A stretch of 63,457 bases of DNA, filler included, from Octopus bimaculoides (taxonomy: Eukaryota): assembly GCF_001194135.2 (NCBI RefSeq). It is 4 parts of 4 records of this genome, joined end to end, with 100 filler letters (N's around TTAATTAATTAA, not from the genome) between each part and the next. Parts side by side here need not be neighbours in the genome. Positions count along the whole stretch, not along the records: positions 27,476 to 57,127 come from NC_069000.1; 3 more parts are not named here. The stretch is one strand, 5' to 3'. Positions 27,538 to 42,951 of this stretch are shown here, in pieces. Made by a program: the position numbers and the translations under genes. Below the pieces are notes generated by a model. The model saw nothing but the letters and a program-made list of their open reading frames with translations, searched no databases and had not been told where the DNA came from. Positions within the stretch are counted from its first letter, which is position 1. Each line of letters opens with the position of its first letter.

Positions 27538-27651
27538 AAACGCTGCAATCACTGCCACTAAAATTAGGTGGGCAGGAACAGAGAAAATTTTCATTTCCAG
27601 TGCTTCGACAAGTTCCTCCATTTAAGCAAGGATAAGAGTAACAAGCATCAT
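27538..27651 (-). CDS. EGF-like repeat 6 exon
   Basis: 114 bp, phase 1-1, tttttgcag|...|gtaagt; [37 protein letters not shown]. Confidence 0.93.
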
Positions 27652-27906
27652 CTGCAAAAAAAATAATAATAATGATAATAATTTTTCCTACAATGAGAAC
27701 AAGGTCTGAAATTTGGTGTGGGTGGGGGCATGGGTGAGGGGAAGGCGCTATTCAATTACCTTGACCTCAGTACTCAAGTGGCACTTGTTTGATCAACCTT
27801 GTAAGGACAAAAAGCAAAGTCTACTTTGGCAGCATTTGAATTCAGAATGTAAATCGAGAAGAAATGCCACTAAGCATGCTAACAATTTTTCCACCTTACT
27901 ACCTTC

Positions 27907-27960
<54 letters not shown>

Positions 27961-39913: not shown

Positions 39914-41582
39914 ACTTGGTAGCGTACACCATACTTTCACTCATTGTTTTAGGTGCCTGTTTAACCTTTTCGTTACTGTATTTCTGTTGAGATGCTCTGT
40001 ATTTCTTTCAGTTACTTTAAATATAACAAAGAATTTAGTAAAATAACTTAGTTATCATTAAGCTAGAGTTAAGAACATAAATTGTGACTAAGGTCTGGTG
40101 GAAGATTTTAATTAAAAACTTATGAAAACAAGACATTTGTACTACAGAGCCGGGTTGGTAATGAAAGGGTTAATCACCAGTAGACATAAACACCTGTAGC
40201 GGGATGTGTAACAAAATGCCTTGGGCTGACCAAAGCATTGTGAATGGATTTGGTAGACGGAAACTGAAAGAAGCCCATCGTGTGTGTGTGGCTTTGTTTC
40301 TGCTTGTTTCCCATCAAACAGTGATAGTGTGTTTACATCCCCACAGTTTAGTAGTTTGGCAAATGAGACTGATATTTTATACACACACACAAAGTCATTA
40401 ATAATTACGTTAAAGGAAGAATTGAGTCACAGTAAGATGGTGTTGAGAATGTCTTAGTAAAATAAAGGGGCGCTAAATTCTGCAAAAATATTCTAAAATA
40501 TTTGAGCAGCATTGTTCAAAGAGAAAAGCAAGCTTTGCTGTTTTACGTTGAAATCAGCCAGATCTGGTACCTGACACCTACTCAAGAGTGTCATTCTGAA
40601 GATGTACAATCACATCATTGAAATCTCGAAAATGAGATAATACGTGATTAATTCAAAAACGATATGAATAAATAAGTATTACAGAATAATCTGAATGCTA
40701 AAAAAGTTAAATTTGTTTCTGATGTTAATTTCCCATAATCTCCTGCAGTTGAGTGGAGGATGTCCCAGACATGCTGGGCCTTTCCACTGGAATTATTTCT
40801 GCTAAAACAAAAGTAGTGATGCTGGGAAAATGTTCATCCCTAACCCAGCTATAAAGATTTCATGGCACCAGAATATTATCCTGTGGGTGGTGAGCTGGCA
40901 GAAATGTTAGCATGCCGGGTGAAATGCTTATTGGTATTTCGTCTGTCTTTACATTCTGAGTTCAAATTCCACTGAGGTCGACTTTGCCTTTCATCCTTTC
41001 GCCATCAATAAATTAAGTACCAGTTGCGTACTGGGGTCGATCTAATCGACCGGCCCCCTCCCCCAAAATTCCAGCTCTTTTGCTTAGAGTAGAAAAGAGT
41101 ATTATCCTGTGATGTAGATCCTAGATCCTGGATCACAGATGTTGCTGCTGTTGTTGTAATCAGGGTGTTCTGATAATGAAATAATGCTACTTTCACTGGT
41201 TCTTTGTAAGTGAAGAAATGCAGTTGGTGTAGCATGGGCTGTAGCAGTCTGGTTTCCAGCCCTGCTCTATCCTCTTCTGTTACTCCTGTTTAATCCTTAC
41301 TGTACAGAAACAGAGTATATTTGGTTCTGTGCATTTGGACATTTGAGACACAGCAACCAAATGAACTCGTTTTGGATTTTTTTACAAAAAAACCATGTTA
41401 TGGTTATTAATTGTTGTAAATAACTTTGGGAAGTCAATTTCAGTCAATTTTAGCAAATTAATTCAGTATTTGGACATTTGTTAGCAAAAACTTAATCAGT
41501 GCCATTTGGGTTAAGAAGAAGTGCAGTCAAAGGATCCCCAATAGAAACAGAATTTGTTAGAAAACAGAACAAATTAAGGATT

Positions 41583-41652
<70 letters not shown>

Positions 41653-42951
41653 CTGTGCGTATGCATGTGTGTGAATTCAAAAGAGAGATCAACAATTTTT
41701 TTTGTAAATGTCCACTTCTTTTTAGCATTTGCCCTAGGCCTAAATGTATGTTATATCTTAAATATAAAAACATTCTCATGTCCCCCTTCACCACCACCAT
41801 CTCCCTCACAAGTAATATTAATTAATTAAGCAAAAAATTAAACAAATCCTGACACAAAAGGCTGTTTAAAGGCCAAAGAAATATTGAGAAAAAAAGACAA
41901 ACAATATTTTAAATAAAACCTAATAATTTCAGATGTGATGATCATGGATGGAATATCAAAACATATCGAAAAATATCCTGTGTATCCATTTCCATTATTA
42001 TGATGCAAAAATTAAACCCTGACAGAAAGGACCAATTTTTAAACACCATCAACAACGCAATGGTTCCACAAATATATTAAATTAGGAAAACTTTTAGAAA
42101 AGGTCTAAAGGCCCACAGAAAGCACCACAATGGTGCACTAGTTCACAGTCCCTGGTACATTGGTTAAACAGGTTTTACTGAGTAAATATCCACAAAATAC
42201 TAATAATATTAGTATTACTATGGCTCTCTATCATAGAGGAACCAGTAAGTTCTTTTCCTTATAATCCACTCATAATTCTTTTTATCTTTGCCCCTGGTTT
42301 ACATATATACTGTGTTTGTTATATCTTGGTGTATCGCACATCCCATATTCATCTCTGGCAATATGCTTTTTGAAGCAAAAATTAAGCAAAAAGATTATTT
42401 AAAAATCATTAAACTGTTCAGTAGCTTACAAATAAATTGAACGTGAACAATTTTTAGAAAAAAATAAATCTAAAGCCCTCAGTGGCCCTCTTGACGGCTG
42501 TGATCCACATATTACCAACCCCTGATTAATATGATTAAAAGGGAACATTAATATGTAGCTTCAGTTTTATTCCTCTTTTCTTTTTTTTTTCATAAACATC
42601 AAGGCCCTTGTTGGTCAACTCGTGGCTAGAAACCCATCAGTTGCTGAATCTTACTGTAGGACATCATTTGAAAGAGACTGGCAGCTATTTCTAAGGATTT
42701 GATTAGCCACATGAAGATTCCTTCTTTGGCTGAAGCTACTGGGACATATTATATTGAAACCTTGAGGGGGTTTACAAGTGGGGGGTAAAAATCAATGTAT
42801 CAGTCCTTTATGAGGATCACATCACCACAGTACTGTCACACCAACACGAAAACAACCATACCAACACAACCCTTGACCATTCAAAGAACTAAAATATAAT
42901 GGAATTGAAATAAGCTGTTGAGCAACATCCTTACCTATTCGTTGCCATCAT
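27538..42951 (-). CDS. Spliced gene: signal peptide + C-type lectin-like domain + 6 EGF-like repeats (10 coding exons found, >=381 aa, 3' end not found)
   Basis: Exons 42951-42935, 39731-39661, 36964-36788, 35103-34894, 33843-33733, 31823-31713, 31046-30936, 30110-30000, 28970-28860 and 27651-27538 have AG acceptors and GT donors (the acceptor of the 42.9 kb exon is at 42960) and join in one open frame: [36 protein letters not shown]...[21 protein letters not shown]...DCSV. Confidence 0.9.
28860..28970 (-). CDS. EGF-like repeat 5 exon
   Basis: 111 bp, phase 1-1, ttttcacag|...|gtgagt; [36 protein letters not shown]. Confidence 0.93.
30000..30110 (-). CDS. EGF-like repeat 4 exon
   Basis: 111 bp, phase 1-1, tttacag|...|gtaagt; [36 protein letters not shown]. 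Confidence 0.93.
30936..31046 (-). CDS. EGF-like repeat 3 exon
   Basis: 111 bp, phase 1-1, ttttctag|...|gtaagt; [36 protein letters not shown]. Confidence 0.93.
31713..31823 (-). CDS. EGF-like repeat 2 exon
   Basis: 111 bp, phase 1-1, tttcag|...|gtaagt; [36 protein letters not shown] (missed by the ORF track). Confidence 0.93.
32114..32252 (-). pseudogene. Degenerate EGF pseudo-exon in the intron between EGF1 and EGF2
   Basis: ttttgaag|AC then [26 protein letters not shown]. Cys falls at codons 3, 8 and 14 as in the live exons; codon 23 is TGA and codon 25 is TAT. An A-rich insertion follows, then TGC AAA ACA G|atgagt (broken donor). Confidence 0.75.
33733..33843 (-). CDS. EGF-like repeat 1 exon
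   Basis: 111 bp, phase 1-1, cag|...|gtaagt; [36 protein letters not shown]. Confidence 0.93.
34894..35103 (-). CDS. CTLD C-terminal half exon
   Basis: ttttcag|...|gtaagtc, 210 bp, phase 1-1. [69 protein letters not shown] carries the WIG motif and the terminal C-x8-IC motif. Confidence 0.9.
36080..36500 (-). mobile_element. SINE family A, near full-length intronic copy
   Basis: Reverse complement aligns by eye with 54943-55357. Confidence 0.85.
36788..36964 (-). CDS. CTLD N-terminal half exon
   Basis: tttgttttgcag|...|gtaagta, 177 bp, phase 1-1. [58 protein letters not shown] matches the CTLD pattern CP..CY..A...C...L..I.S..E...I. Confidence 0.9.
37040..37440 (+). mobile_element. Penelope-like element GIY-YIG endonuclease remnant
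   Basis: [26 protein letters not shown]...[19 protein letters not shown]...[11 protein letters not shown]....LSWSII, then CRLCIKE after a frameshift; this matches the cysteine-linker plus GIY-YIG pattern of PLEs. Confidence 0.85.
38180..38485. mobile_element. Dispersed repeat family D (catcatcatcgtttaacgtccgctttccatgctagcatgggttgg...), probably a LINE/SINE 3' end
   Basis: Homologous copies at about 30150-30360, 35390-35810 (reverse), 47570-47870, 54695-54915 (reverse) and 55790-56160; some carry internal ~60-bp tandem units. Confidence 0.75.
39661..39731 (-). CDS. Signal-peptide exon ([23 protein letters not shown])
   Basis: tatttccag| acceptor and |gtaagt donor, with a hydrophobic core followed by small residues (TSAG). 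The phase-1 end joins the CTLD exon to give KDCPP. The ATG at 39721 is an alternative start. Confidence 0.85.
39961..40173. mobile_element. piggyBac-like MITE
   Basis: TTAA at both ends with short inverted termini ttaaccttttcgttac ... gtaatgaaagggttaa. Confidence 0.65.
42935..42951 (-). CDS. Probable first coding exon (MMATN-R)
   Basis: Minus strand reads ccttgcttcag|GAAGTAAAC ATG ATG GCA ACG AAT AG|gtaagg. The ATG has an AAAC context. The phase-2 end joins in frame to the phase-2 start of exon 39731. Confidence 0.6.

What the first reader, a model, noticed from the sequence alone, without database searches (positions are those of the whole stretch)
27538..42951. Hidden modular CTLD + 6xEGF extracellular protein gene, mostly invisible in the ORF track
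Seen: ten minus-strand exons with canonical splice sites join in one frame to give a signal peptide, a CTLD and six EGF repeats (>=381 aa). Only the signal-peptide and two EGF exons appear inside tracked ORFs. Known: CTLD followed by EGF repeats is the layout of vertebrate selectins (one EGF) and of the thrombomodulin/CD93 group, but the EGFs here are of the Notch/fibropellin CxxxPCxNGGxC type with one exon per repeat. Inference: this is an independently assembled, exon-shuffled lectin-EGF adhesion, matrix or immune protein that may be lineage-specific to cephalopods or molluscs and may be uncharacterised.
Basis: partly seen in the sequence, partly recalled or inferred. Interest (0 to 1): 0.75.

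Follow-up and report, generated by a model that had tools for sequence, protein, structure and literature searches.

The report
Hidden secreted lectin-like multi-EGF gene
The stretch holds a real, spliced gene, very abundant in one RNA sample, for a secreted protein with a very divergent C-type-lectin-like head and a rod of at least seven EGF repeats; its building blocks are ordinary, but no protein database searched here holds it.

Summary
The gene is real. One 2622-nt RNA contig in run X16 (word depth 6159) joins nine minus-strand exons exactly at GT..AG sites. All nine are phase 1, and they give 1117 nt and 372 open codons. The order is signal peptide (ATG at 39721), two exons of a lectin-like domain, then six single-exon EGF repeats. 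A second run from another study (X26) confirms four of the EGF joints.

The assembly gap (38950-39354) lies inside intron 1, and the transcript passes over it with no letters missing.

The gene runs off the piece. A seventh EGF and about 1.5 kb more of the transcript lie outside, so the C-terminus is unknown.

The "CTLD" is only weakly detectable. Pfam scores it at 20.3 bits, below the 22.6 cut-off. The best solved structure is CLEC9A at E 8e-5. It lacks the canonical C2 cysteine and the Ca2+/sugar motifs. Its C-terminal half has no relative among 1.84 billion representative proteins.

Exon 3 stays open and indel-free in three related species (dN/dS about 0.4-0.6).

The most likely function is a tissue-specific secreted matrix or adhesive-type glycoprotein. 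I rate it a new member of a known kind, of moderate interest.

The parts
39770..39777 (-). TATAAATA box, 56 nt upstream of the start codon; putative core promoter
   Evidence: Read from the sequence. The RNA contig begins at 39723. The role is inferred, not tested.
39661..39723 (-). Exon 1. The CDS starts at ATG 39721. It encodes [20 protein letters not shown] plus the first base of the next codon: a signal peptide, with likely cleavage after TSA. The donor is gtaagt.
   Evidence: X16 contig positions 1-63 map here. The loose end at 39661 equals the first 30 nt of exon 2. An in-frame stop lies 8 codons upstream. The signal-peptide call is by eye.
38950..39354 (.). Assembly gap, inside intron 1 (39660..36965)
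   Evidence: The transcript contig goes from 39661 straight to 36964 with no extra letters.
36788..36964 (-). Exon 2: first half of the CTLD-like domain (DCPPKG...SHCYYIY...[27 protein letters not shown])
   Evidence: The first and last 30 nt were seen as loose ends of the X16 contig. The contig's letters upstream of exon 3 add up exactly to exons 1 and 2 (63+177=240). The Pfam Lectin_C and PDB CTLD matches lie mainly here.
34894..35103 (-). Exon 3: second half of the CTLD-like domain (SLWIGA...WRTCGYDF...GNWTG...YEYEC...LPVICK)
   Evidence: X16 contig positions 241-450. Open and indel-free in organisms B, C and E. No sequence relative when searched alone.
33733..33843 (-). Exon 4 = EGF1
   Evidence: X16 contig 451-561; joints 33843>34894 and 31823>33733; Pfam EGF.
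32200..32252 (-). Relic half-EGF ([18 protein letters not shown], then a stop); not part of the mRNA
   Evidence: Read from the sequence. It is skipped by joint 31823>33733.
31713..31823 (-). Exon 5 = EGF2
   Evidence: X16 contig 562-672; X26 contig, depth 4.8.
30936..31046 (-). Exon 6 = EGF3
   Evidence: X16 contig 673-783; joints 31046>31713 and 30110>30936.
30000..30110 (-). Exon 7 = EGF4
   Evidence: Joints 30110>30936 and 28970>30000 in X16 and X26.
28860..28970 (-). Exon 8 = EGF5 (donor gtgagt)
   Evidence: X16 contig 895-1005. The loose end at 27651 equals the end of this exon.
27538..27651 (-). Exon 9 = EGF6, the last exon inside the piece. The transcript goes on to a 7th EGF ((F)DFCYSNPCL...) outside it.
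   Evidence: X16 contig 1006-1119 and X26 contig 281-394. The loose end at 27538 was read in frame.
42935..42951 (-).
   Evidence: Depth is 0 in X16 and in three other RNA runs. Only an unspliced 2.8x contig lies nearby, at 42581-42814.

Best explanation
This is the 5' two-fifths of a protein-coding gene on the minus strand.

Transcription probably starts just downstream of a TATA box at 39777-39770. Nine phase-1 exons are spliced into an mRNA that encodes three parts:
- a cleavable signal peptide;
- a roughly 130-residue, very divergent C-type-lectin-like domain. It keeps the N-terminal cysteine pair, WIGx and the C-terminal cysteine. It has lost the canonical C2 cysteine and the EPN/QPD and WND Ca2+/sugar motifs, and it has seven cysteines, an odd number;
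- a tight tandem array of at least seven non-calcium-binding, Notch/fibropellin-type EGF repeats with 5-residue linkers. Five of the six repeats in the piece carry the O-fucose consensus, and EGF6 also carries an O-glucose consensus.

Shown: the gene, its splicing, its frame, a very high RNA level in one run and near absence in the others, and an intact exon 3 in three sister species.

Inferred: the product is exported and works outside the cell as a tissue-specific structural, matrix or adhesive-type glycoprotein. The EGF array would form a stiff glycosylated rod. The lectin-like head would bind a protein or surface partner rather than a sugar through calcium. The unpaired cysteine could allow covalent multimers.
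For: - Splicing and expression: one 2622-nt contig at depth 6159 in X16; X26 replicate.
- Restricted expression: among indexed RNA runs only X16 holds the words of exon 3. Raw-read run X24 and runs X27, X33 and X44 show essentially none over the exons they were laid on.
- Frame and splice sites.
- EGF domains. No cbEGF consensus, with O-fucose and O-glucose motifs present.
- CTLD-like head: Pfam Lectin_C E 9.6e-4. The top 19 hits among solved structures, and 27 of the 30 listed, are CTLDs; the best is CLEC9A at E 7.9e-5. hhalign against a snaclec profile gives E 5e-5 over residues 14-114.
- Conservation: exon 3 is open with no indels, and all Cys and Trp are kept, in organisms B, C and E. dN/dS is 0.39-0.57.
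- Context from papers: CTLD and EGF modules recur in secreted marine bioadhesives and matrix proteins (PMC6337334, PMC9229212, listed). One of the EGF hits is named 'adhesive plaque matrix protein 2-like'.
Against: - The C-terminal ~1.5 kb of the transcript is outside the piece. A transmembrane anchor or further domains cannot be excluded.
- The tissue of run X16 is coded, so 'secretory tissue product' is not verified.
- The signal peptide was judged by eye only.
- Contig depth is a poor measure of expression.
Confidence: 0.55

Rival explanations
1. It is the ectodomain of a membrane-anchored adhesion or signalling receptor, working like a selectin, a CD93/thrombomodulin-group protein or a DNER/Delta-type protein. 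The transmembrane and cytoplasmic parts would be encoded outside the piece.
For: An N-terminal CTLD followed directly by EGF is the layout of these receptor ectodomains. About 1.5 kb of transcript is unseen. The best EGF hits include Delta, DNER and Notch proteins.
Against: Similarity is confined to generic EGF repeats at 45% identity or less. There is no sushi or CCP domain between or after the head and the EGFs within the piece. Extreme abundance in a single run (depth 6159) is more typical of a secreted bulk product than of a receptor.
Confidence: 0.2
2. It is a soluble immune pattern-recognition lectin or opsonin that binds microbial glycans through the CTLD.
For: CTLD proteins are common invertebrate immune receptors. 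The exon evolves fairly fast (dN/dS 0.4-0.6). In organism E it is more diverged than the flanking intron (26/210 against 6/132 changes, p=0.02).
Against: The EPN/QPD and WND calcium/sugar motifs are absent and the canonical C2 cysteine is lost (direct reading; alignments). The RNA is absent from most runs rather than broadly present.
Confidence: 0.1
3. The N-terminal domain is not a CTLD at all but an unrelated cysteine-rich fold, and the weak matches are chance or compositional.
For: Pfam's score is below the gathering threshold (20.3 against 22.6). The C-terminal half alone hits nothing among solved structures or among 1.84 billion representatives. The hhalign probability is only 68%.
Against: The top 19 solved-structure hits, and 27 of the 30 listed, are CTLDs, and several alignments span nearly the whole domain. 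The hallmark positions line up: CP...CY.F, the cysteine in helix 1, L..I.S..E..F, WIG, the W before the loop, and C....VIC at the end.
Confidence: 0.15

Closest known systems
Fibropellins and other Notch-type multi-EGF extracellular matrix proteins (for example sea urchin fibropellin-1/-3)
   Same: Both are secreted proteins dominated by tight tandem non-cb or Notch-type EGF repeats (CxxxPCxNGGxC). Fibropellins are among the best sequence hits at 35-38% identity over the EGF part.
   Different: Fibropellin-3 and some of the 'fibropellin-like' hits carry an N-terminal CUB domain (Pfam column), and from general knowledge fibropellins end in an avidin-like domain. Here the head is a CTLD-like domain and the C-terminus is unknown.
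Selectins (CTLD-EGF-CCP-TM)
   Same: A signal peptide, then an N-terminal CTLD immediately followed by EGF.
   Different: Selectins have one EGF, then CCP repeats and a membrane anchor, and a Ca2+-dependent EPN/WND sugar site. Here there are at least 7 EGFs, no CCP within the piece, and the Ca2+/sugar motifs are absent. No specific sequence similarity was found.
Group XIV CTLD proteins (thrombomodulin, CD93, CLEC14A, CD248; PMC6852297)
   Same: An N-terminal, non-sugar-binding CTLD followed by several EGF repeats. The head binds protein ligands.
   Different: Those proteins have a sushi-like domain between the CTLD and the EGFs, a mucin stalk and a transmembrane tail. Here EGF1 starts 5 residues after the last CTLD cysteine. 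They did not appear among the listed hits.
Mussel foot protein 2 (adhesive plaque matrix protein 2) and other EGF/CTLD-containing marine bioadhesive proteins
   Same: Abundant, gland-specific secreted proteins built of tandem EGF repeats. Tyrosine is fairly rich here (7%). An 'adhesive plaque matrix protein 2-like' protein is among the hits (44% identity).
   Different: Mfp-2 has no lectin-like head. Nothing here shows DOPA modification or an adhesive tissue source.
Snake-venom C-type lectin-like proteins (snaclecs, for example EMS16 beta) and CLEC9A-type CTLDs
   Same: They are the best-aligning solved CTLDs. They are non-sugar-binding heads that bind proteins. A cysteine after the conserved W (WRTC against WKDC) aligns with a cysteine in the same place in snaclec beta chains.
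   Different: Identity is about 22%. Snaclecs are single-domain heterodimers without EGF repeats. The canonical C2 cysteine, present in snaclecs, is His here.

Membership tests
EGF-like domain (Pfam PF00008) | Six-cysteine pattern and a profile score above the gathering threshold | tested here: met
   133 bits against a cut-off of 21.5, six stretches. Regular C-x4-C-x5-C-x8/9-C-x-C-x8-C pattern six times.
Calcium-binding EGF (cbEGF, PF07645) | D/N-x-D/N-E/Q-C consensus at the start of the repeat | tested here: not met
   The motif occurs in none of the six repeats. PF07645 is not among the Pfam hits.
[quoted passage not shown] | Profile score at or above Pfam's gathering threshold | tested here: not met
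   20.3 bits against 22.6, E 9.6e-4, covering only profile positions 4-71 of 107.
[quoted passage not shown] | Significant similarity to solved CTLD structures | tested here: met
   CLEC9A E 7.9e-5. The top 19 hits, and 27 of the 30 listed, are CTLDs. hhalign against a snaclec profile gives E 5e-5 with probability 68%.
[quoted passage not shown] | Four core cysteines (C1-C4, C2-C3) and the WIGL motif | tested here: inconclusive
   WIGA, C1 (QCC), C3 (YEC) and C4 (VIC) are present, as is the long-form pair C0/C0'. The C2 position is His (Tyr in organism E). An extra Cys sits in WRTC. The domain has 7 Cys in all.
[quoted passage not shown] | CTLD double-loop three-dimensional fold | not testable with these tools
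   Structure prediction refuses spliced sequences.
Ca2+-dependent carbohydrate-binding C-type lectins | EPN or QPD motif plus WND | tested here: not met
   The aligned region reads GLGVKP...FYEYEC; none of these motifs is present (direct reading; alignments).
Selectins | CTLD, a single EGF, CCP repeats and a transmembrane anchor | tested here: not met
   Six EGFs follow the head in the piece and a seventh lies beyond it. No CCP/sushi hit. The anchor is not visible, being outside the piece.
Group XIV CTLD proteins (thrombomodulin/CD93) | Sushi-like domain between the CTLD and the EGF repeats; mucin stalk and transmembrane segment | tested here: not met
   EGF1's first cysteine is 5 residues after the last CTLD cysteine. 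The stalk and transmembrane segment cannot be tested because they would lie outside the piece.
Fibropellins | C-terminal avidin-like domain after the EGF array; CUB at the N-terminus in fibropellin-1/-3 | tested here: inconclusive
   The N-terminus is CTLD-like, not CUB. The C-terminus lies outside the piece.

The most novel reading that the evidence does not exclude
This would be an octopod-lineage orphan. The lectin-derived head has diverged beyond sequence recognition, having lost the C2 cysteine and the calcium/sugar site and gained an unpaired cysteine. It would have been fused by exon shuffling to a long EGF rod. The protein would have become one of the dominant secretory products of a single specialised tissue, such as an adhesive, an egg-coat or cement, or a salivary/venom component. 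It would evolve fast between sister species and be missing from all public proteomes.
Probability: 0.25. Interest if true: 0.55.

Novelty: new member of a known kind. Interest (0 to 1): 0.38.

Why it matters
- A transcript this abundant that no searched protein collection holds is a concrete gap in the gene catalogue for this animal. It is a candidate major product of a specialised tissue.
- If the tissue proves to be an adhesive, reproductive or venom gland, the protein would be a direct handle on that secretion.
- It would also be a clean example of phase-1 exon shuffling joining a degenerate lectin head to an EGF rod.
- If it is simply one more mosaic extracellular-matrix protein, the value is limited to better annotation.

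Tried and rejected
The gene was therefore covered in pieces.
2. It has no RNA in X16 or in three other runs, and the contig starts at 39723.
3. A search for orthologues with the whole protein returned only generic EGF proteins: Notch, Delta, DNER, fibropellin.
4. A search with the N-terminal 158 aa returned nothing.
5. An exhaustive HMMER search with the exon-3 peptide returned one spurious low-complexity repeat protein.
7. A profile from the four species' exon-3 sequences (A1) was not used. Its exon-2 columns would have been dropped as mostly gaps.
8. tblastn of the model against the whole piece found no paralogous copy elsewhere in the piece.
9. Rfam found nothing across the piece, and the bacterial-type promoter/terminator scan, run only on 39650-39900, found nothing there.
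10. Paper searches found no description of such an octopus protein. The 2015 octopus genome paper was not held.
11. A pseudogene or chance-ORF reading was rejected, given the splicing, abundance and conservation.
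Full report
**What is in the sequence.** The piece (27476-57127) is AT-rich eukaryotic DNA, about 35% GC, and full of microsatellites and interspersed repeats. Minus-strand translation shows six clean EGF-like open segments. It also shows two segments with C-type-lectin hallmarks (CPP...SHCYYIY...[13 protein letters not shown] and SLWIGA...LPVICK) and a hydrophobic N-terminal peptide. With canonical AG/GT borders these make nine exons, every one in phase 1. Joined, they give 1117 nt and 372 codons with no stop. 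The exons are 39661-39721, 36788-36964, 34894-35103, 33733-33843, 31713-31823, 30936-31046, 30000-30110, 28860-28970 and 27538-27651.

- In RNA run X16 (organism A, 2015) one 2622-nt contig of word depth 6159 maps as follows. Positions 1-63 map to 39723..39661, 241-450 to exon 3, 451-1005 to EGF1-EGF5 and 1006-1119 to EGF6.
- Joints lie exactly at the predicted sites, and the skipped DNA has CT..AC ends on the + strand.
However, its first 30 and last 30 letters appear as the loose ends next to exons 1 and 3. The lengths add up exactly: 63+177=240.
- Run X26 (2022, another study) has low-depth contigs (4.8-7.5) with four of the same joints, 31823>33733, 31046>31713, 30110>30936 and 28970>30000. 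One of them runs on through EGF6 into a seventh EGF.
- Among indexed RNA runs only X16 holds the words of exon 3. Raw-read run X24 and runs X27, X33 and X44 show essentially nothing on the exons they were laid on. Expression is therefore very high in one sample and close to nil in the others. The sample's tissue is coded and unknown to me.

**The gap.** The N run 38950-39354 lies in intron 1. The transcript passes from 39661 directly to 36964 with no unplaced letters. No exon is hidden in the gap, and both sides belong to one gene in the same order, strand and frame.

**The 5' end.**
This adds MMATNRFQL and gives 381 aa (reconstructed).
- X16 has zero depth at 42825-43040. Only an unspliced 2.8x contig lies at 42581-42814.
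- The main contig begins at 39723.
- A TATAAATA box lies at 39777-39770, an in-frame stop lies 8 codons before ATG 39721, and there is no other ATG in between.
- I therefore take 39721 as the start codon. An upstream non-coding exon used at a low level cannot be excluded.

**The 3' end.** The loose end beyond 27538 reads, in frame, (F)DFCYSNPCL, which is the start of a seventh EGF. Contig positions 1120-2622, about 1.5 kb, lie outside the piece. The number of EGFs and the nature of the C-terminus, including whether there is a membrane anchor, are unknown.

**The protein.**
- Residues 1-16/17 ([16 protein letters not shown]|G) look like a signal peptide. This is by eye and was not tested.
- Residues 153-370 are six EGF domains (Pfam E 3.7e-39). 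Each is 32-33 residues from first to last cysteine, with 5-residue linkers, and they are 34-50% identical to one another.
- None of the six has the calcium-binding consensus. Five carry the O-fucose consensus C-x4-S/T-C. EGF6 also carries the O-glucose consensus C-x-S-x-P-C.
- Residues 21-150 are CTLD-like but very divergent. Pfam Lectin_C scores 20.3 bits, below its 22.6 cut-off, at E 9.6e-4, and covers profile positions 4-71 only.
- phmmer against solved structures gives CLEC9A at 7.9e-5. The top 19 hits, and 27 of the 30 listed, are CTLDs, and some alignments span almost the whole domain.
- hhalign against a small snaclec profile gives E 5e-5 and probability 68% over residues 14-114.
- The second half alone hits no solved structure. 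Its only hit among 1.84 billion representatives is a spurious repeat protein.
- Read against those alignments, the domain keeps the long-form N-terminal cysteine pair, the helix-1 cysteine (as CC), WIGA, the W before the long loop, and the last two cysteines.
- The canonical C2 is His. An extra cysteine sits in WRTC, where snaclec beta chains also have a cysteine. EPN/QPD and WND are absent.
- Seven cysteines leave one unpaired.

**Relatives.**
- The whole protein finds only generic EGF proteins (Notch, Delta, DNER, fibropellin, an Mfp-2-like protein) at 45% identity or less over the EGF part. No identical or near-identical entry appears.
- The N-terminal 158 residues find nothing.
- In the collections searched, the gene product is therefore not present. 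This suggests it is unannotated, though absence from a collection is not proof.
- At the DNA level the locus exists in related species, which hold 14-30% of the sampled words.
- Genomic contigs of organisms B, C and E cover exon 3 without indels. They show 10, 11 and 26 substitutions, an open frame, and all Cys and Trp kept. Replacements are mostly conservative, and dN/dS is 0.49, 0.57 and 0.39.
- In organism E the exon is more diverged than the flanking intron (26/210 against 6/132, p=0.02). This hints at fast evolution, but the numbers are small.

**How it probably works.** Shown: a spliced, abundant, narrowly expressed mRNA for a signal peptide, a lectin-like head and an EGF array, kept under moderate constraint in sister species. 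Inferred: the protein is exported. The O-glycosylated, non-calcium EGF array forms a stiff rod. The head, lacking the calcium/sugar site, binds a protein or surface partner. The spare cysteine may link molecules together. Extreme abundance in one sample fits a bulk secreted product (matrix, adhesive, coat or gland secretion) better than a receptor. I put about 0.55 on that reading. I put 0.2 on a membrane-anchored receptor whose tail lies outside the piece, and 0.1 on a soluble immune lectin. Separately, I put 0.15 on the head not being a CTLD at all.

**Comparison and verdict.** The protein works like other mosaic CTLD/EGF extracellular proteins, but it is not a member of the selectins (one EGF, CCPs, a calcium site). 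It is not a group XIV CTLD protein (sushi-like spacer, mucin stalk, transmembrane segment). Membership of the fibropellins cannot be shown (they have a CUB head and an avidin-like tail). The domain kinds and the one-exon-per-EGF, phase-1 layout are textbook exon shuffling. The new elements are the gene itself, its orphan-like head domain, and its very high and narrow expression. It is a new member of a known kind, of moderate interest.

Noticed in passing
window 32200-32252 (-): A relic half-EGF ([18 protein letters not shown]) sits behind an AG, runs into a stop, and is skipped by the transcript. It is probably a decayed EGF exon between EGF1 and EGF2. Unlike the live repeats, it starts with a cbEGF-like DNEC.
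   Followed up: partly
window 28925-28970 (-): A second X16 contig shares the first ~45 nt of the EGF5 exon, then continues into a different EGF-like sequence (...GTCMMIGNRFQCIC). It points to a paralogue or a near-duplicate later repeat outside the piece.
   Followed up: no
window 27889-28447, 29012-29470, 34083-34345, 35440-35780, 36187-36702: These intronic interspersed repeats include a 231-nt unit present twice at 29012-29470. They reach RNA word depths of 10^4 to 10^6 in the runs of both species they were laid against. They are expressed repeat families, not part of the gene.
   Followed up: no
window 34800-35141: In organism E the lectin-like exon is 12.4% diverged while the flanking intron is about 4.5% diverged (p=0.02). 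This may mean accelerated coding evolution, but the sample is small.
   Followed up: partly
window 43205-44212: Upstream of the gene lie His/Thr-codon microsatellites (43205-43500) and a 20/60-nt tandem array (43748-44212). They create long spurious ORFs on both strands.
   Followed up: no
window 42581-42814 (-): A single unspliced 234-nt RNA contig at depth 2.8 in X16 lies about 3 kb upstream of the gene. It is background or a minor upstream transcript, and is not joined to the gene.
   Followed up: no
window 48071-48792 and 53782-54654: Two further assembly gaps lie in the piece, upstream of the gene, both flanked by TG/TA-rich simple repeats.
   Followed up: no
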